From: Phaeosaccion multiseriatum
Lineage: Eukaryota > Protista > Ochrophyta, other classes
Reading direction: 5' to 3'
Length of the DNA: 64,000 nt
NCBI GenBank assembly: GCA_965112735.1
Contig: OZ218964.1
Coordinates: forward strand, 930,001-994,000
Shown here: piece by piece, positions 28,012-37,400 of the stretch
Numbering within the stretch: position 1 is the first letter of the stretch
How the letters are laid out: each line of letters starts with the position of its first letter
The notes under the pieces: model-generated
What the model was told of the DNA's origin: nothing
Database searches by the model: none
What the model saw: the letters and a program-made list of their open reading frames with translations, nothing else
Position numbers and translations under genes: made by a program

Positions 28012-31000
28012 TTACGCCAGGTAGGCGCGCTCCGAGTCGTCGGGGCAGAAGGTGATAACGTAGGACATGTCGTTAACGCCTCCGTTGTTGCCTCCGTTGG
28101 TGCACACGAATGTCGAGGTGGCGTCATCGTACGCGAAGGTGTAGGCCGTGGGGCAAGCCTTCTTGATGTATTTGCAGAAGGGGAGGGCGTACTCCATCCA
28201 CACGGGGTTGGTGTTGGAGCACTCGTGATCCACGGGGAAGGCGACACCCTCGTCGTTCCAGATGGGGCATCCGCACACCGTGTCAGGGGCGTTGGGCTGG
28301 TAGCCGGACTGGCTGTAGAACTCTCCTCCGCAGCCGTACAGCTCACCGAAGTTCTGTGAGCCCTGACCCGTCTCCATCCTGCAGTTGTAAGGAGCGTCCA
28401 CGTGGGAGACTCCGCCACAGATGGACACGCCGGACCACCAACCGATGGGGGTACCGCACACCCCCTGCTGGAAGCTCCACTGCGTACCCGCACCGAGACC
28501 CGCGTTGTGCGCCCCGCACTTGAAGTCACCACTGCAGTCGTTGTCCGTCACACAGCTCGAGCCCTCCACAACGGACTCTGTGTCCACCCAGCGGAGCGAT
28601 TGGGCGTGGTTGGTGTTGCCGTAAATGCCGTCAATGGTGGGGTCAAACTCCCATGTGCAGCCGGGCATGTCATCAAACTTGGCGAATTCAGCGTCTCCCG
28701 GGTTGCCGCACCAGAAGCGGTCGGCGCCTCGGTCCTCCGCATCGGCGGTTCCCTCGCGATCGTCGGGGCGCATGGCCATGGGCACGTTGACGCCATCGAT
28801 GTTGGAAATGTCGTAGAAATCAGCAAAGTTGTCGCTGAAGGTGAACTCGGCCTTGGTGACGGGGCCTCCCGGCCCTGTGAAGGCCGGGCAGTTGCCGGCA
28901 CCGCACACCCCCGTCTTGCAGCGTCCAGTGGTGCGATCGCATCCCGTCGACCCCCACACGTTTCCGCTCCAACGCATGTCTGTGCCGGGCACGTCGGGGA
29001 GGGAGACGGCGATGGAAGCTCCTCCGTTCAAGTACGTCTGGTCGTCCGTGAGCGGCAGCGTCCAGTGGCACCCGTTGGTGGCAGGATCCCACACTTGGTT
29101 GATGGGGCACACACCGTTATCGGCTTGGTTGGCACGTCCTCCAGTGTGTCCCACACGCACCTCGAAGGAGCAGCGGTTCTCAAAGATGAGCTGACGAGGG
29201 CCGTTGGGGGGCAGGCCGGCTTGAGCAGCGGCCGGGGGTCGGTTCGCGGGCACTACCACGGGGGGCTGCGTGACGAGACCGATAGGGGGGGTAGGTGCGA
29301 TGGGAGAGGCCGTGGGCTCAGGGGTGGGAGCCGGGGCGAGGACGACGGGGGCTGCGGCGCCGTGGCTGGACTCGTAGACGGAGTTGGCCCATCCTCCTCC
29401 GCAAAAGAGGTCAGAGTCACCGGAGCAGGGCGTGGTGCAGAAGGTGGAGGGGCCGTGCTTTCCGTAGGCGTTGCCACAGAAGCACTGCGACCTGTACTGC
29501 AGCGCAAAGTAGTTATACTTGTGCTCGGTGCAGTACAGGTTGCACTCGGCGGGGGTGAGCGTCTGCGACTCCATGGAGGTGGCGCCCATGTCTCGGTCGT
29601 GGTTGTCCGTCCAGCAGCCCTTGTAGTCGTACGTCTCAGAGACGCCCGTGGGGAGCTCGACAACGGGTGTGGGTGCGGGTACGTTCGGTGTGCTGGGTTC
29701 TTCGATGGCCTTGGTCAGGTACACACTGTTGGCCCAGCTGCCTCCACAAACCTGTCCGTCGTCGCCGGTGCACTCCATGTTGCATGCCCCGGACTCTCCG
29801 TAGGCGCCGTACGAGTTACTGCAAGAGCACATCTCTCCGAATTGCACACCAAAGTACTCGAATCCGCCGGCGGCGCAGAAGGCGTTACACGTCTCGAGCG
29901 AGTTGGAGGTGCTGATTTGGTCTTCGCCACTCAAGTCACGAGGGTACTCGTCGTGGAAGCAACCCATATACTCGAATCCGGCGTGTTCCAGCGGCCTCGC
30001 AGGTGCTGGCGGCGTTGCTGGTGGCGTCACGACGGAGTTGGGTTCGCTGGGGGACGGCCCCCCTGGAACGATGGTCAAGGTGGGCACCACCTTGTGCACG
30101 GAGTTCTTAAAGGGCGCGCCGCAGTTGAACTCGTCGTCGCCGGGGCACTCCTGGTAGCACTTCTTTTCCTTCAACTTCTTGTACTTGCCGAAGGAGCCGT
30201 CGCCGCAGAAGCACTGAGCGAGACAAAGAACGGAAGGAGGGGGTGGGGCGGGCCAGCGTGTGTGAGAGGGGGAGAGCAAGCAGGTCACGTACTTCATTGG
30301 TGGACAGGGACGGAGGAAGGCAAAGGAGGACCACAAGAGGAATTGAAAGTAGCCCCCGAGTGGGCGCATCCTTGGTCGATGCTTGCACACACACTTGTTT
30401 AAAACAAAAAAGGCGCTCTCTTCTTACCTCGCCCTTGTCTTGCAGGCCGAAGAACTCAAAGCCCTGGCACTCGGCGTTACACGTCTCCGGAGAGTTGGTG
30501 TCGCCCAGAGTGACATGCTTGCCAGACAAGGCCCTGTCCGAGGCCACATCCTTGTAGCATCCCATGTACTCGTGCTCCCCCTCCGGCGAGTACCCCTCGA
30601 AGTTCATGAACACACGGTTGGCGCTTGGGCCTCCGCAGTACTTGTTACTCTTGCCAGAGCAGAGCGTGTTGCATTGGTCCGATGGGCCGTACGTGTCGTA
30701 GTCGTCGTCGCCACAGTAACACTAAGTGAAAGAACAACAGAACAATGAGGGAGGTGAGAGGAATCCAAAGAGGATGGAGGGCGGCTGTGAGAAAGGAGGA
30801 CACTTGGATGGGTAGAAACAAGCCTCCTTTTATTTGGAGAGGAAAGCCCCACCTTTAGGGAAAGGGCAAGCGGGCGATCGGGCCGGCCCCTTCATTACCC
30901 CCCTTCCCCCCTCCCTCTCGCCCCAGCCCTTATTGTTCTCTTGCCCGTACCTCGTTACCGTTTTGGACACCGTAGTACTTGAAACCATCGCAGAACTTCT

Positions 31001-31184
31001 TGCACTTGCCCGGGCTGAACTTCTTGCCGTCAGCCCACGTCTTGGACGCCCCCGAGAGCGCACGCTCGCCTGGGTTGTCAGCGAAGCACCCAAGGTCAAC
31101 CTTGGCACCCTGCACAGCGGGAAGCGCCCCAAGCACAGCGGCGACCACAACAGCCGATGCCCCGGCGAGGGTTTCAGACCTCAT
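28012..31184 (-). CDS. Secreted protein with four WSC carbohydrate-binding domains and a C-terminal thaumatin-like domain
   Basis: Exons 31184-30951, ~30722-30428, ~30213-28012. Signal peptide MRSETLAGASAVVVAAVLGALPAVQG; 4x GC[FYW].D...C...C...C.CG...CGG..AN.V; thaumatin motifs WSGNVWGSTGC, TKAEFTF, DFYDISNIDGVNVPM, KACPTAYTFAYDDATSTFVC, YVITFCP. Confidence 0.92.
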
Positions 31185-31671
31185 TTTCCGTTCCTTTGTT
31201 GGGTGAGGAAAGGTGTGATTCAGGGTCGGGAGTCCGTCTTTTGTTTCACTCGCTCCCCGCACTGCAAACAGTCAGTGTGTGGTGCGGTGTGGTCCTCGTT
31301 CGTTTATTGTTCTGATGGCGTGGGGTTTTGCTGCGCCTTACCCCCTCTCCTCACACACACAAAAACGGGTCGTTTTGCGTGAGCAAGTTGGTGCAGATGA
31401 AACGGCATTTTTCGCGTGCAGCGTTTTTAATGAAACGGCATTTCGATAGTATCAATTTTTTATGAAGGGCACGGTATATATCGCAATCCATTTACGTGAG
31501 CATACGTACCCATTATGTGCTTCTGGCACACTCCCGCTCCTTTTGAGAGTGTGCCTGGGGCACCGGGACACATGATAAAATTAAAAAAGATATAAAAAAA
31601 AAAGTGTGGTAGTAAACAGAACTACTGAAGAGCAGAACGCTTAACACACTAAGAGTGTAAGGCCTACGAAG

Positions 31672-33548
31672 ATGGTGATGCACAGTGCAATTGCTGCCCT
31701 CCTTGTGTTACTTGGTGTGGCTCATGGCCAGCAAGATACTTTCGAGTTCAGCTTGGATTTGTTGGCCTCATCCACAGGGTACTTCAAGGTGGAGGGGTAC
31801 GAGGGACTTCAGCCCATCCTCTACATGGTTCGCGGCAGAGAATACACCTTCGTGCAGGTAAGGGCAGGCTCCATGGGAAAGAGCAAGTCTTTTTTTTTTC
31901 CTCCTCGCTCTGCTCTGCTAATAGCTGTATTGTCTGCGCTGGCACCACAGAGAGACTCGACCAACTGGTACCATCCCCTGGGCTTTAGCTACTTCCCAGA
32001 CGGGGCCCACGAGGGCGTGGATGAGCTGGAGGAGGGTGTGGGGAACGGGGAAGCCCCAGTGTACTACATCGATGGCGAGGTGAGTCACGGGTCTTTCTTT
32101 CTTTTGTTTGTGGCTGTGTGGCTCTCCTCAGCTCTTGACGCCGTACACTGCTTGCTGCCCCTTCTCGTGTCTTTGCTATGTCCCTCCACAGCTGTCCGAC
32201 CTTGACACATACGAGCCACAGTTCGCCTACCCGATGGACTTCTGGATGGTGCGTGATGCTTACATAAATGAAAATACATTGAAAAGAGAGAGAGAGGCGG
32301 AGGTCGTCGAGAGACGGCTGTACTTGCTCGGGAAAGCGACTGCACCACACCCCTGGCAGACTGCCCCCCCCCCGTCCGTTCGCTACTCAGCCACTCGCAT
32401 CATGCGATGCGCTTCTTTTCATGTCTCTGACGGAGCCACTCCCTCCTCCTGCGTGCCCTATCTACCGGTCTGCCTGTCTGCCCTCGTGCGCAGGATCACG
32501 AGTACGAGGTGAGGCTCACCTTCACGGACCCCGATGTGGACGAAATCTTCTACTTCTGCCATATTCACAACTCCATGTCCGCCCGCATCTTGATGGTGGA
32601 CGATGAGGACGACATCCCCTCTTCGGAGCCCACTGATCGTGAGTTCGAGGTGGAGCTGTACGACCTCGTGGAGCGATCTTCCTTTGATGAGGAGTGTGGC
32701 ACCTCTCTGGCCGGCCCCTTTGAGCCGAAGGACGGCACCCTGGAGAGCGAAATGTGCCCCGGAGACGTGTTCATCTGCGGTGACGAGGACGACTCTTACA
32801 CCCGATGCCTGCACAGCATTGACTGCATGATGAAGAGCCAGGTTCGTGCGCTTAGAAGGCCTTGTTTCCTCTGGTTACCCACGACTTGCCTCTTTCGTTG
32901 TCTGTTTCATCTGTCCCTCCCACACATTGAACCAAACAAATCACGACAATCTCCCCCCTTCCCCCCCTCCCTCCAGATGCGTGACGCCACCACGATTGAG
33001 GTCTCCACCGACACGATGAGTCGAACGGGAGCCTTCATGGCCCACATGATCCCACACCACGACAACGCAGGTGTGTGTATGGTGTGTAGCGGAGCTGTGG
33101 ACTGGACGATGGTTTGCAATGCATGGTCTGCTCCGCCTTCCTCTCACATCCTTCCCCCCTTCCCCTGCCTTCCTCCTCTCCACTAGTGAACATGGCCAAG
33201 ATCTTGATGGCCAACCCTGGTGACGAACCCCTGGACGAGGAAGTGGAGGCTCTCATCATCGAAATCATCAACGGACAGAACGCGCAGAACACCTTTATGC
33301 GCGCCTGGCTCAGGGAGAACGAGGTGGAGGTGGCGGAGTGCTCGGACAGAGACGCCGCGGCCGACAGTGGCGACAACGATATTCCGGACACGGCCCTTGC
33401 CGGCTTGATTGTGCTGGGATGCGCTGCCCTTTGCGCGAGCGCGCTGGCCTGCTTCTTCTGCCAGAAGAGCAAGCAGCAAAAGAGGGGGGCTCAGACCACC
33501 GGCCACGTGGAGCAGCACCAGGTGAATTCTAAGGCCTCCGCTTATTAG
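31672..33548 (+). CDS. Type I membrane protein: signal peptide, cupredoxin-like domain, Cys-rich linker, single DUF305-like helical hairpin, TM helix
   Basis: Exons approx. 31672-31857, 31949-32079, 32192-32248, 32494-32841, 32977-33070, 33188-33548. WYHPLGF...FYFCHIHNSMSARI; FMAHMIPHHDNAVNMAKIL...IINGQNAQNTFMRAWL; TM ALAGLIVLGCAALCASALACFFC then basic QKSKQQKR. Confidence 0.75.
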
Positions 33549-34107
33549 AAATATGATGCAGTAGCCCCCTTGGAGGGCTCTGGCTGGGTACAATAGGGTG
33601 GGTAGATAAGTCCGAAGCAGGCAGCAGTGAGTGGCTGGGATAGCTAGGACGGGAAAATAGAAAATAGAAACGAGTAATGCTAAATGTACTACTGAATCAT
33701 CACGTTCCAACAGCTGATGGTGACTGCCGTGAAAGCCTTGAACCTGAGGTGGGATTGAGCTTTGAGCCTGGCTCTACCCTGTGTCGTCCACTTGAGCTCC
33801 CCCTGATGCCGGATACTCGACCCCTGAAGTGCTACCTGCTACCTGCTACCGCCGCCGCCAGCTGGCGTGCTACACGGCGTCAGCTGACGTGCTGGTAGAG
33901 AATGTCACCGGGCCGGGGCCCGGTAGCACATGAAACGAGAACGGAAAAAAAAAATAAAAAAAAATGAAGTAGACGTTCTATGAGTTCAAAATGCCATCTG
34001 TTGGGGCATCGTGATCGTCTCTAAGGGGCGCGGTCTATGCCACTGCTCTCGTCCTGGCGTCCCTCTTTTCTGGCACTGCGCTCCCAGCTCTCTGCGTGGC
34101 CCTTGTG

Positions 34108-34403
34108 ATGAAGCTCTGTCTGGTGGTCGTTCCCCTGCTCGCGGAGCTGACCTGTATCGAGAGCTTCTTGCCGTCATCAGCGGTCTCGACGGCCACAGCC
34201 GCAACGGAAAGATTCTTCACGGCCAGGCGACCTCACCTCCACAACAAGTGCCATAGTCACAGGAGAAGCGAGCAGCGGCAGCAGCAGAAGGTTTCGAGAC
34301 TAGGGGTCTCCAACACCAGCAGTGGGCCGGAAGATGGAATCGACAGATTTGGGCGAGTAGTTCGGATGGTTGGGGCCGCAGTAGCAGCGGCAGAGGATAA
34401 CCA

Positions 34404-34439
<36 letters not shown>

Positions 34440-37400
34440 GCAGCAGAAGAGGAAGAGCCAGCAGCACCCGAGTGGTAGCGCCAGGGACAGCGTCACGCAG
34501 GTGGTCGAGAAGGGTGAAGGGGCAGCCGTACCAGCAGCACCAGCACCAGCAGACGCAGACGTAAGCTGGTCTCTATCGGAGCAGGAGCAGCAGTGGCGGC
34601 CGCGGCAGTATGAAGCAGATGGCGAGCAACGGGGACCGGCAGCGGAGGATTTCTTGCACAATTGGGAGGAAGAGGGGGGCGGCTCCGTAGACAAAAGAGG
34701 AAACGAGTCGCTCCTGGATGTGGAAGTAGTACCGCCCGCACACGTCTTGGACAGCCTGCGGGAGGAAGAGGGCGGTACCTCCCCAGTGCAGGAGCAGGAG
34801 GGAGAGGAGGGGGGCTCATCACAGAAGGCAGCAGCAGCAGCACCAGCCGCCGCGGTAGGGACGGAGACGGAGGAGCTGAGCGGCAGCTTCATTGACATGT
34901 TCAGAGGATCCACCCCGTACATCCGCGTGCACCGGGGGTCGGTTATGGTGGTGCACATTCCCGGAGAGGTCCTGGAGTCACCCTCGTTCCAACCCCTCAT
35001 GGACGATCTTGCCCTCACTTCCCTGCTCGGAGTGAGGTTGGTCATCGTGGTGGGGTCGCGTATGCAGACGGACCGCCTCCTAATGCGGCAGGGTATGGAG
35101 TGCCTGTACGCTGCGGACTACCGTGTCACCGACGTGGACACGCTGCGTGTGTGTAAGGAGGCGGCAGGCTTTGTCATGTTCGAGATGGAGAGTGCCCTCA
35201 CCCGTGGCTCCCGAGGGCGGGGACGTATGATGGGAGGGAAGGACGGGGCCATCAACGTGAGCACCGGCAACATGTACAGCGCTAGACCCATCGGAGTGAG
35301 GAACGGGGTGGACTACGGTTACAGCGGGGAGGTGCGCAGGATTGACTCCGACAAAATCGCGGCCAAGCTGGAGGAGGGAGAGGTGGTGTTGGTGAGTGAG
35401 TTAAGTGAATGAGTGTGCTTGACATAGGACAGAGGACAGAGGTTGGACGAGATAGGGTGTCCCAATGGATGGATGGATGGATGGATGGATGGATGGATGG
35501 ATGGATGGATGGATGGATGGATGGATGGGTCGGACGGAAGAGACAAACTGCCTGCCTGCCTGCCTGCCTGCCTTCTTGCCTACCTGCCTACCTGCCTTCC
35601 GGCCTCTCTTCGGTGGCCCTATTCCGTGGCCCAGCCCAATCGCGGTGAAACGGACCGACAGCCGGCAGCCACCTCTCTCCTTGCTTTTGCTGTGTGCGCT
35701 GTGTGCTGGCTAGGCCGACCTTACTCTACTCTCCGTTCGCTCTCTCTTCAGTGCTGACATCTCCCCCCCTCTGCTGTCTCCGCCACTACCCCACTAATCG
35801 GTTTCGTCCGGTCTCGGCCCTTCCCTTTCTTTTCTTGCCACCCAAAAGCTAACAAGCCTGGGGTTCAGCGCCAGCGGCGAGTTGTTCAACGTTGACACGG
35901 AAGCCCTCGCTGCCGACTGCGCAGCCGAGCTCAGAGCCAGCAAGCTCATCTACATCACAGAGGGGCAGCGGCTGAGGCGAAAGTCGTCGGGTGTGCCGGT
36001 TCAGTGTCTGAGGACAAGAGAGGCTGAGCGGCTGCTCAAGAAGCGCTGGCCCGAGAAGACGAACAACGGCAACTGTGTCGAGCTCACCTCCGTGCCCGCT
36101 TCGTCGATGGAGGGACCGCAGGTGAGGGGTGGGGGTGGGGTGGCGATCCCTGTCTATCTGTCTGTTGGGGTATGTTGGGCTTTGGTAGAGAGCGAGCGAT
36201 GATTCTCCGAGAACAAAACCCCAACCCGACGAATTGCCAACCCTCCGCCTACGTCTCAGCTTGGCCTGTCTCTTCTCTGCTCTGCCTGGGCCTTCCGCTC
36301 GCACCTGTATGTCACCCTCTTTCGCTCACGTCATTTACATCCTCTTACTCTCCTTCTTCCTCTGCTATTGTATCACCAACTGCTGCTTACTGCCTTGCCC
36401 TGCCACCCCGCCACAGGCCTTCTACGAGGCGCGCACCGTGAGCATTCTGCGTAACTGCGTCAGGGCTCTTCATCGGAAGGTGTCCCGCGCACACGTGGTG
36501 CCTCCTTACAGGTTGGCGACGCTCGCATGCAACTTGTCTACGTGGGGTAGGGTGGGCAGCCGCCTTTTCTTTCTTTTCCCTGTAACCCCCACCACCGAGC
36601 GTATACCCCGCTCCCTCCCCTCCCTCCTCCCTTGTTCACTCACTCCCTCCCTCCCTCCCTCCCTCCCTCGCTGCCTCTCTCCCTCCCTTGCTCCCTCTTT
36701 CCTCCCTCCTCCCTCACCTGTTGTTGTTCGTGTTTTGTTTCTTTGGTTTCGCCCCCCCCCCGAAAGTGGCGATCTGTTGCAAGAGCTCTTTACGCGAGAG
36801 GGCAGTGGCCTCTTGATCTCGAGGGACGTTTATGACGGCATCAGGCCCGCGGGGAAGGCCGATCTCAAGGGCATTCGGAACATCATTCGCCCCCTGGAGG
36901 AGGAGGTGAGTGAGGAATGAATGAATTAGTGAGTGAGTGAGTGAGTGAGTGAGTGAATGAGTGAGTGAGTGAGTGAGTGAGTGAGTGAGTGAATGAGTGA
37001 GTGAGTGAGTGGGTAAGGGAGGGAGGGAGTGAGTGCGTGAGGTAGGTAGATAGGTAGGGAGGGAGGGAGGGAGGGAGGGAGGGAGGAATCAGTGAGTCAG
37101 TGAGGGAGGGAGATGACCGAGAGCACGCATGAGAAAGGCCACGGGGGTCGCACTCAAAATGGGATGACTTGTACGTGTACCTGGAGAGAGAACGGCAGGG
37201 AATTTACTCCTTTCCCTACTCTGCTCTGCCCTGTTCTCCTCTTGTCTACCCTGCTGCGTCTTTCAGGGGATATTGGTGCCTCGGCCCGAGGACAAGCTGC
37301 TCCAGGACCTCAAGAACTTTTTTGTCGTCACCAAGGTCAGTCACTTAGTCAGTCAGTCATTCAGTCAGTGAGGTAGTCAGCCAAGCAGTGGGTGAGTGAG

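What the first reader, a model, noticed from the sequence alone, without database searches (positions are those of the whole stretch)
31672..33548. Candidate undescribed cell-surface copper system: amicyanin-type blue-copper motif fused to a half DUF305 (CopM-like) bundle
Seen: signal peptide; upstream His in WYHPLGF (31972) and C-x2-H-x2-M (CHIHNSM, 32557-32577); a Cys-rich acidic linker; one MIPHHxxAVxMA...II..Q..Q...M..WL helix pair; a TM helix with a juxtamembrane Cys and basic tail. Knowledge: His...Cys-x2-His-x2-Met is the type-1 Cu ligand loop of amicyanin; DUF305 is a ferritin-like fold whose cyanobacterial member CopM binds copper with two such repeats. Inference: a single repeat must homodimerise, yielding a membrane-anchored protein that couples an electron-transfer Cu site to a metal-binding four-helix bundle (Cu/Fe capture, reduction or sensing). 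I know of no characterised eukaryotic protein with this layout, but I could not run a search.
Basis: partly seen in the sequence, partly recalled or inferred. Interest (0 to 1): 0.7.

Follow-up and report, generated by a model that had tools for sequence, protein, structure and literature searches.

The report
ISIP3 iron-starvation protein gene, algal copy
This six-exon gene is a new copy of ISIP3, a membrane protein that marine algae switch on when starved of iron; its function is still unknown, and both of its domains most resemble copper-binding proteins rather than iron stores.

Summary
A clean six-exon GT-AG gene (31672-33548, +) encodes about 391 aa. It has a signal peptide, a beta-sandwich domain with His...Cys-x2-His-x2-Met, a Cys-rich acidic linker, one DUF305 helix pair with MIPHH, a C-terminal TM helix and a basic tail.

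It is not an undescribed system. It belongs to the ISIP3 family (iron-starvation-induced protein 3) of diatoms, pelagophytes and other eukaryotes.
- A profile of 88 relatives hits all six exons in order.
- T. pseudonana ISIP3 (XP_002297275) aligns colinearly to four of the six exons (1, 2, 4 and 6) at E < 0.001.
- A 2026 paper already says that ISIP3 combines DUF305 with a cupredoxin/plastocyanin-like domain.

- FYFCH[IVL]HxxM occurs in 119 of 120 relatives.
- An AF2 model of an orthologue (pLDDT 89.8) matches only cupredoxins in its N-domain (Z up to 8.5).
- Its helical part matches a dimeric Cu(I)-binding half-DUF305 protein (Z 10).
- In a natural two-module relative, the two halves are modelled as one CopM-like four-helix bundle (Z 13.6, 132 residues aligned), which supports pairing.

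Copper binding, ligand geometry and regulation remain untested.

Verdict: a new member of a known family of unknown function.

The parts
31672..31857 (+). Exon 1 (62 codons): start codon, signal peptide (31672-31728) and the first strands of the cupredoxin-like domain.
   Evidence: Sequence and donor GTAAGG. Family HMM positions 161-204, E 6e-11.
31951..32079 (+). Exon 2 (43 codons): NWYHPLGFSYFPDGAHEGVDELEE. Candidate N-terminal Cu ligand His at 31972-31974. Second near-invariant His (DGAH) at 32008-32010.
   Evidence: HMM positions 206-257, E 6e-18. H72 is 99% and H84 is 94% conserved in the family.
32192..32248 (+). Exon 3 (19 codons): LSDLDTYEPQFAYPMDFWM, the helical insert of the cupredoxin-like domain.
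   Evidence: HMM positions 276-292, E 0.11 alone, colinear with its neighbours. L, D, E, P, F and W are invariant in the family.
32494..32841 (+). Exon 4 (116 codons): the last two strands of the cupredoxin-like domain, with the ligand loop FYFCHIHNSM (Cys 32557-32559, His 32566-32568, Met 32575-32577). From about 32602 it continues as the acidic Cys-rich linker, which has 5 conserved Cys.
   Evidence: HMM positions 296-402, E 5e-32. C, H, H and M are 100% conserved.
32977..33070 (+). Exon 5 (31 codons plus 1 nt): end of the linker helix and start of DUF305 helix 1, with MIPHH at 33046-33060.
   Evidence: HMM positions 405-428, E 5e-3. The MxxHH motif aligns to both CopM repeats in the orthologue.
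33187..33548 (+). Exon 6. It holds the rest of the DUF305 helix pair (to about 33311), a conserved Cys (AEC), an acidic spacer, the TM helix (33393-33461), a basic cytosolic tail and the stop codon (33546-33548).
   Evidence: Pfam DUF305 scores 16.5 bits, E 0.009, for this exon alone. HMM positions 430-540, E 3e-14.

Best explanation
The gene encodes an ISIP3-family type I membrane protein.

Shown:
- A six-exon gene of about 391 aa with a signal peptide, a conserved ectodomain and a single C-terminal TM helix with a short basic tail.
- Homology to named diatom ISIP3.
- An N-terminal cupredoxin-type beta-sandwich carrying an invariant His / Cys-x2-His-x2-Met set.
- A disulfide-type Cys-rich linker.
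- One DUF305 helix pair carrying the CopM MxxHH motif.

Inferred:
- Two chains pair through their DUF305 halves to make a CopM-like four-helix bundle that binds Cu(I)/Cu(II) through Met/His.
- Each cupredoxin domain holds a type-1 copper that transfers single electrons.
- The protein therefore works as a copper-binding, redox-capable ectodomain at the cell surface or in endosomes. It is most likely switched on by iron shortage, as in diatoms and pelagophytes.
- It would serve the copper side of high-affinity iron acquisition: copper capture or hand-over, or Cu/Fe redox conversion alongside ISIP1-type uptake. It would not store iron.
For: Gene model and anatomy.

Family identity:
- The published T. 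oceanica ISIP3 sequence shows the same motifs (PMC3491386 supplement).
- Lommer's table gives T. pseudonana ISIP3 as XP_002297275, which is P0361 in my hit cluster.
- P0361 aligns colinearly to exons 1-2, 3, 4 and 6 (E 1.7e-10, 0.015, 9.7e-10 and 8e-4).

Family size: 911 word-search hits. The exhaustive search gave 210 representatives at E <= 1e-30.

Ligand set: FYFCH[IVL]HxxM occurs in 119 of 120 hits. H72, C148, H151 and M154 are 99-100% conserved and all present in the window.

Fold, from the AF2 model of orthologue P0008 (pLDDT 89.8, pTM 0.82):
- The Cys ends a strand, His and Met sit in the loop before the last strand.
- Foldseek and VIA hits to residues 22-167 are all cupredoxins: 2dv6_A at Z 8.5 with 23% identity, plus rusticyanin, amicyanin and pseudoazurin.

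DUF305:
- Orthologues score 41-45 bits against a 27-bit cut-off, covering profile positions 2-69 of 151.
- CopM 5fej matches at E 5e-12, to both of its repeats.
- 7vw1_B scores Z 10.0 and 7vw0_A scores Z 9.6 at rmsd 1.7 A. These entries are titled 'dimeric periplasmic protein bound with cuprous ions'.

Pairing: in the two-module relative P0130 (pTM 0.86), CopM aligns 132 of 135 residues at Z 13.6 across model residues 278..719. That span covers both halves.

Copper chemistry of relatives: CopM binds Cu(I) with KD about 3e-16 (PMC4335983). MxxHH is the characteristic DUF305 motif (PMC11836926).

Iron regulation and cell biology of ISIP3. A link to Cu quotas is proposed in PMC13284251.
Against: - No metal-binding, spectroscopic or genetic data exist for any ISIP3.
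- No cupredoxin family is detected by sequence, either in Pfam or by profile against PDB sequences. Cupredoxin Z-scores of 7-8.5 are only moderate.
- Ligand geometry could not be measured, because the tools return no coordinates.
- The models are of an orthologue about 49% identical and of a paralogous two-module protein, not of the window's own protein.
- Pairing rests on a monomer AF2 model and on analogy.
- No RNA data exist for this organism, so neither expression nor iron response is shown.
- ISIP3 responds to Fe in published work. I found no test of its response to copper.
- Family members in heterotrophs (ichthyosporeans, a diplonemid) show the role is not tied to plastid iron supply.
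Confidence: 0.6

Rival explanations
1. Iron-storage or iron-buffering protein. On this view the DUF305 'ferritin-like' bundle binds or mineralises iron, as ISIP3 is often annotated in the literature, and the beta-sandwich is only a scaffold.
For: Pfam places DUF305 in the ferritin-like clan, and papers call ISIP3 a putative iron-storage protein. It is strongly induced by Fe starvation and switched off within 30 min of Fe resupply.
Against: - The helix pair has no conserved Glu or Asp. Its conserved positions are Met, His, Gln and Asn, with no ExxH di-iron motif.
- The nearest solved relatives, CopM and 7vw1, are copper binders.
- Induction by starvation is odd for a store.
- An invariant type-1 Cu ligand set would be left unexplained.
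Confidence: 0.1
2. Copper sponge for detoxification, like CopM. When iron-limited cells upregulate unspecific metal uptake, ISIP3 would bind excess copper outside the cell or in endosomes. The cupredoxin site would be just another Cu-binding site with no electron-transfer role.
For: CopM confers copper resistance by binding Cu outside the cell. Fe-limited cells accumulate Cu and are more Cu-sensitive, and ISIP3 has been linked to raised Cu quotas. The sequence and fold match to CopM supports this.
Against: A buried, invariant His/Cys/His/Met set in a cupredoxin fold is the signature of an electron-transfer site, not of a sponge (established knowledge of cupredoxins). Only one or two bundle sites per dimer give little buffering capacity. 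The tight co-regulation with ISIP1 and FRE1 points to uptake.
Confidence: 0.15
3. Iron (co-)receptor. The ectodomain would bind Fe(III), or an Fe-ligand or siderophore complex, and hand it to ISIP1-dependent endocytosis. The conserved His, Cys and Met residues would serve iron or structure rather than copper.
For: Lommer et al. proposed 'co-receptor (?)'. ISIP3 co-localises with ISIP1 and correlates with it at R2 = 0.94.
Against: Thiolate/thioether/imidazole sets and MxxHH motifs are soft ligands typical of copper, not of Fe(III). There is no similarity to transferrin or to siderophore-binding folds.
Confidence: 0.1

Closest known systems
[quoted passage not shown] Examples: T. oceanica THAOC_34758, T. 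pseudonana XP_002297275, P. tricornutum Phatr3_J47674 / XP_002182075.
   Same: Signal peptide, a conserved region of about 320-360 aa, DUF305 and a C-terminal hydrophobic anchor. Identical core motifs: (W/Y)YHP(L/I)GF, DGAH, FYFCHIHxxM, CGT, MIPHHxNAVNMAK and IINxQNxQI. Direct tblastn homology.
   Different: Only about 30-40% identical to diatom ISIP3. It belongs to a shorter subtype shared with brown algae, Chrysoparadoxa and ichthyosporeans. This subtype lacks the diatom Cys-containing insertion between DGAH...ELE and the PxY strand. Regulation by iron is not shown for this organism.
CopM of Synechocystis (PDB 5fej and related entries) and the dimeric half-size DUF305 protein 7vw0/7vw1.
   Same: MxxHH helix pair. 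E 5e-12 to both CopM repeats. 31% identity, Z 9.6-10 and rmsd 1.7-2.5 A to 7vw0/7vw1. Both relatives are extracytoplasmic and both bind copper.
   Different: CopM has two repeats in one chain and is soluble and bacterial. Here there is one repeat, fused to a cupredoxin domain and a membrane anchor, in a eukaryote. Copper binding is untested.
Small blue copper proteins (amicyanin, rusticyanin, pseudoazurin) and the N-terminal cupredoxin domain of H. denitrificans nitrite reductase (2dv6).
   Same: Greek-key beta-sandwich. The Cys lies at the end of the penultimate strand, followed by His and Met in the loop. The C-x2-H-x2-M spacing equals amicyanin's (from my own knowledge of amicyanin, ligands H53/C92/H95/M98). 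Structural matches reach Z 6.7-8.5.
   Different: No sequence-level family membership. The domain is larger (about 145 aa) and has an inserted helical hairpin. There are two further near-invariant His, one directly after the Cys. It is tethered to other domains.

Membership tests
ISIP3 | Sequence homology to a protein published as ISIP3. | tested here: met
   P0361 is XP_002297275.1, which Lommer 2012 lists as T. pseudonana ISIP3. tblastn to window exons 1-2, 4 and 6 gives E 1.7e-10, 9.7e-10 and 8e-4, colinear. Exact 12-mers of T. oceanica ISIP3 occur in family hits.
ISIP3 | Architecture: signal peptide, a conserved DUF305-containing ectodomain and a C-terminal hydrophobic anchor. | tested here: met
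   Lommer's description is quoted.
ISIP3 | Transcript induced by iron starvation. | not testable with these tools
   No RNA run holds the locus. The four runs are genomic contigs.
Cupredoxin / type-1 blue copper | Greek-key beta-sandwich fold. | tested here: met
   Tested on orthologue P0008, not on the window protein itself. AF2 pLDDT is 89.8. All top hits to residues 22-167 are cupredoxins, with Z up to 8.5.
Cupredoxin / type-1 blue copper | An upstream His plus Cys-xn-His-xn-Met in the loop between the last two strands, conserved in homologues. | tested here: met
   The C, H and M columns are 100% conserved and H72 is 99% conserved. All are present in the window. The loop position follows from DSSP on the model.
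Cupredoxin / type-1 blue copper | The four ligands cluster within bonding distance of one site. | not testable with these tools
   The model's coordinates are not returned. It is also unresolved whether H72 or H84 is the N-terminal ligand.
Cupredoxin / type-1 blue copper | Match to a curated cupredoxin sequence family. | tested here: not met
   There is no Pfam hit on the N-domain of the window's exons or of four orthologues. There is no cupredoxin among the PDB sequence-profile hits.
DUF305 (PF03713) / CopM | Pfam match above the gathering score. | tested here: inconclusive
The window's exon 6 alone scores 16.5 bits against a 27-bit cut-off. The window's exons alone find no CopM. Orthologues score 41-45 bits.
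DUF305 (PF03713) / CopM | Two MxxHH helix-pair repeats in one chain forming a four-helix bundle. | tested here: not met
   Only one repeat is present, covering profile positions 2-69 of 151. The bundle is completed only by a second module in the two-module relative's model.
Ferritin-like di-iron proteins | Conserved carboxylate/His (ExxH) di-iron ligands in the helices. | tested here: not met
   No Glu or Asp appears among the columns of the helix pair that are at least 85% conserved.

The most novel reading that the evidence does not exclude
ISIP3 may be a minimal two-site metallo-oxidoreductase rather than a passive binder. The invariant His directly after the copper-ligand Cys (FC-H-IH) would sit with the near-invariant DGAH His and the D/E cluster, or with the MxxHH bundle of the partner chain. 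Together they would form a second metal site wired to the type-1 copper through a Cys-His bridge, as in nitrite reductase and multicopper oxidases. That would let the dimer oxidise Fe(II) or reduce Cu(II)/Fe(III) at the cell surface during iron starvation.
Probability: 0.15. Interest if true: 0.8.

Novelty: new member of a known kind. Interest (0 to 1): 0.35.

Why it matters
[quoted passage not shown] It is used as a field marker of iron stress, yet its function has been open for more than a decade and it is usually labelled 'ferritin-like iron storage'.

This gene adds no new kind of protein. The analysis around it does sharpen a testable alternative for the whole family:
- an invariant type-1 copper ligand set;
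- a half-DUF305 whose closest solved relatives bind Cu(I);
- predicted pairing of the halves into a CopM-like bundle;
- no di-iron ligands.

If that alternative is right, ISIP3 ties copper use to iron acquisition in algae. The family also occurs in some heterotrophic protists.

Tried and rejected
- Pfam on single exons gave only a weak DUF305 hit on exon 6 and nothing for the N-domain.
- PDB sequence searches with exon 4, exon 5 or the first 64 aa of exon 6 found nothing meaningful. The pieces are too short.
- A PDB sequence-profile search with the family alignment found only DUF305 proteins and no cupredoxin.
- The first word search, with the stop-free stretch 32494-33183 (exon 4, intron 4, exon 5 and part of intron 5 read in frame), found only 4 relatives. 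The alignment query was needed to open up the family.
- RNA evidence: no RNA run holds the locus. The four holders are genomic contigs identical to the window.
- The T. oceanica ISIP3 protein itself was not among the fetched proteins. The link was made through T. pseudonana XP_002297275 instead.
- No paper was found for PDB 7vw1.
- There is no CACGTG box in the upstream intergenic region, and the count over the whole window is at chance level.
- A plastid-targeted protein was considered and rejected. The predicted cleavage AHG|QQ lacks the aromatic residue at +1 that ochrophyte bipartite leaders have (from my own knowledge of such leaders).
- A bacterial contaminant or pseudogene was rejected because of the five GT-AG introns with an intact frame.

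Full report
OBSERVATION

The region 31672-33548 (+) holds a clean six-exon gene.
- Exons: 31672-31857, 31951-32079, 32192-32248, 32494-32841, 32977-33070 and 33187-33548.
- All five introns (93-245 nt) are GT-AG.
- Intron 5 splits a Val codon (G|TG).
- The CDS is 1176 nt, giving 391 aa plus the stop codon.

- Signal peptide: MVMHSAIAALLVLLGVAHG.
- His of WYHPLGF at 31972.
- CHIHNSM at 32557-32577.
- An acidic linker with five Cys.
- MIPHHDNA-V-NMAK...IINGQNAQNTFMRAWL.
- A 23-residue hydrophobic stretch with four Cys, followed by QKSKQQKRG.

Four public DNA runs hold the stretch without a single difference. No RNA run holds it.

The splice model is validated by homology.
- The six exon translations align end to end with full-length relatives.
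- A profile HMM built from 88 relatives, without the window, hits them colinearly at profile positions 161-204, 206-257, 276-292, 296-402, 405-428 and 430-540. The E-values run down to 5e-32.

WHAT IT IS

A word search with the in-frame stretch covering exon 4, intron 4 and exon 5 found Ectocarpus and Chrysoparadoxa proteins. The alignment of these opened a large family.
- 911 word-search hits.
- In the exhaustive HMM search, 6350 cluster representatives at E <= 1e-3, 1083 at <= 1e-10 and 210 at <= 1e-30. The weaker hits probably include proteins that match only the DUF305 part; I did not inspect them.

Named members come from a wide range of eukaryotes:
- many diatoms;
- brown algae (Ectocarpus, Cladosiphon, Nemacystus, Choristocarpus, Discosporangium);
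- Chrysoparadoxa;
- the pelagophyte Chrysophaeum;
- the chlorophyte Tetraselmis striata;
- the ichthyosporeans Sphaeroforma arctica and Abeoforma whisleri;
- the diplonemid Lacrimia lanifica.

The family is ISIP3.
- The supplement of Lommer et al. 2012 (PMC3491386) prints T. oceanica ISIP3 (THAOC_34758). It is described as an 'iron-responsive cell surface protein ... C-terminal hydrophobic tail; contains ... DUF305'. It shows the same motifs.
- The same supplement lists T. pseudonana ISIP3 as XP_002297275.
- That accession is P0361 in one of my hit clusters.
- P0361 aligns by tblastn, in order, to window exons 1-2, 3, 4 and 6.

The layout is therefore known, although it has no functional characterisation.

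The window's copy is about 50% identical to brown-algal members and about 30-40% identical to diatom ISIP3. It lacks the diatom-type Cys-containing insertion. The organism is an intron-rich eukaryote with about 58% GC. Earlier notes of this scan call it an alga; I did not check this.

STRUCTURE

FYFCH[IVL]HxxM occurs in 119 of 120 relatives. In a 94-row alignment (88 relatives plus the six window exon translations), the conservation among the relatives is as follows (P0008 numbering):
- H72 is 99% conserved; C148, H149, H151 and M154 are all 100% conserved.
- H84 is 94% conserved.
- Five linker Cys and the motif M255-I-P-H-H-x-N-A..M, Q292 and Q295 are near-invariant.
- All of these are present in the window.

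An AF2 model of the Discosporangium orthologue P0008 is confident (pLDDT 89.8, pTM 0.82).
- The Cys ends a strand. His and Met lie in the loop before the last strand, which is the cupredoxin ligand-loop topology.
- All top structural matches to residues 22-167 are cupredoxins. The best is 2dv6_A (Z 8.5, 106 residues aligned, 23% identity). Rusticyanin, amicyanin, pseudoazurin, laccases and NirK follow.
- Residues 217-307 match the 96-residue DUF305 protein 7vw0/7vw1 at Z 9.6-10, rmsd 1.7-2.5 A and 31% identity. The entry title is 'dimeric periplasmic protein bound with cuprous ions'.

By sequence, the helix pair matches both repeats of CopM (E 5e-12). Pfam DUF305 covers only profile positions 2-69 of 151 in orthologues. 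The helical part is therefore half a DUF305.

To test the pairing inference I folded a natural two-module family member, P0130 (773 aa, pTM 0.86).
- CopM's whole four-helix bundle aligns 132 of 135 residues at Z 13.6 and 31% identity.
- The aligned range is model residues 278..719, which covers both halves although they lie about 370 residues apart.
- This is model-level support that single-module proteins such as this one complete the bundle by dimerising.

MECHANISM

Shown: identity, architecture, conservation and predicted folds.

Inferred:
- a type I membrane protein whose ectodomain dimerises through the DUF305 halves;
- the resulting bundle binds copper through Met/His, as CopM does (KD about 3e-16 for Cu(I), PMC4335983; MxxHH motif, PMC11836926);
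- each cupredoxin domain carries a type-1 copper for single-electron transfer.

Published behaviour of ISIP3 gives the physiological frame.
- It is strongly and specifically induced by Fe starvation.
- It is switched off within 30 min of Fe resupply and is co-regulated with ISIP1 and FRE1.
- It co-localises with ISIP1.
- It has been linked to raised Cu quotas.

The most likely role is on the copper side of high-affinity iron acquisition.

The common 'ferritin-like iron storage' label fits poorly. The helix pair has no conserved carboxylates. Its solved relatives are copper proteins.

LIMITS

- No cupredoxin family is detected by sequence.
- The cupredoxin Z-scores are moderate.
It is also unresolved whether H72 or H84 is the fourth ligand.
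- The models are of relatives, not of the window protein.
- Expression and regulation in this organism are unknown.

VERDICT

This is a new member of the known ISIP3 family, whose function is still unknown. It has modest interest in itself and some value as a sharpened copper-centred hypothesis for that family.

Noticed in passing
P0015, P0021, P0025, P0035, P0347 (family hits): ISIP3-type proteins with the full motif set occur outside phototrophic stramenopiles. They are found in the ichthyosporeans Sphaeroforma arctica and Abeoforma whisleri, the diplonemid Lacrimia lanifica and the chlorophyte Tetraselmis striata. The family's role therefore cannot be specific to plastid iron supply.
   Followed up: partly
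Window 32560-32562 (His after the ligand Cys) and 32008-32010 (DGAH His): Besides the four type-1 ligands, two more His are near-invariant: 100% for the one directly after the Cys, and 94% for DGAH. They sit with conserved D81, E89 and E91. This may be a second metal site linked through a Cys-His bridge, as in NirK and multicopper oxidases. Geometry could not be checked.
   Followed up: partly
P0130, P0121, P0122 and others (660-950 aa family members): Many family members carry two complete cupredoxin + half-DUF305 modules in tandem. In the AF2 model of P0130, the two halves together align to the whole CopM bundle.
   Followed up: yes
P0365, P0367 (in the cluster of P0361/P0278): Two EukProt entries labelled Alexandrium tamarense sit in the 90%-identity cluster of T. 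pseudonana ISIP3. This probably reflects diatom contamination of that dinoflagellate transcriptome.
   Followed up: no
Window 28012-31262 (-): The divergently transcribed upstream neighbour encodes a secreted protein with several WSC domains and a thaumatin domain. The ORF 28012-30390 scores WSC 114.7 bits and thaumatin 78.1 bits. Further WSC-bearing exons lie at 30107-30613 and 30930-31262.
   Followed up: partly
Window 34096-35412 (+): The downstream neighbour is an amino-acid-kinase family gene (probably of the N-acetylglutamate kinase/synthase type). It has a long N-terminal low-complexity region that includes a poly-Gln run.
   Followed up: partly
Window 32494-33183 (+): Intron 4 and the start of intron 5 are stop-free in the exon frame, so a mechanical ORF caller returns a 225-aa ORF (32509-33186) that reads through them. 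Gene callers that ignore splicing would produce a chimeric protein here.
   Followed up: yes
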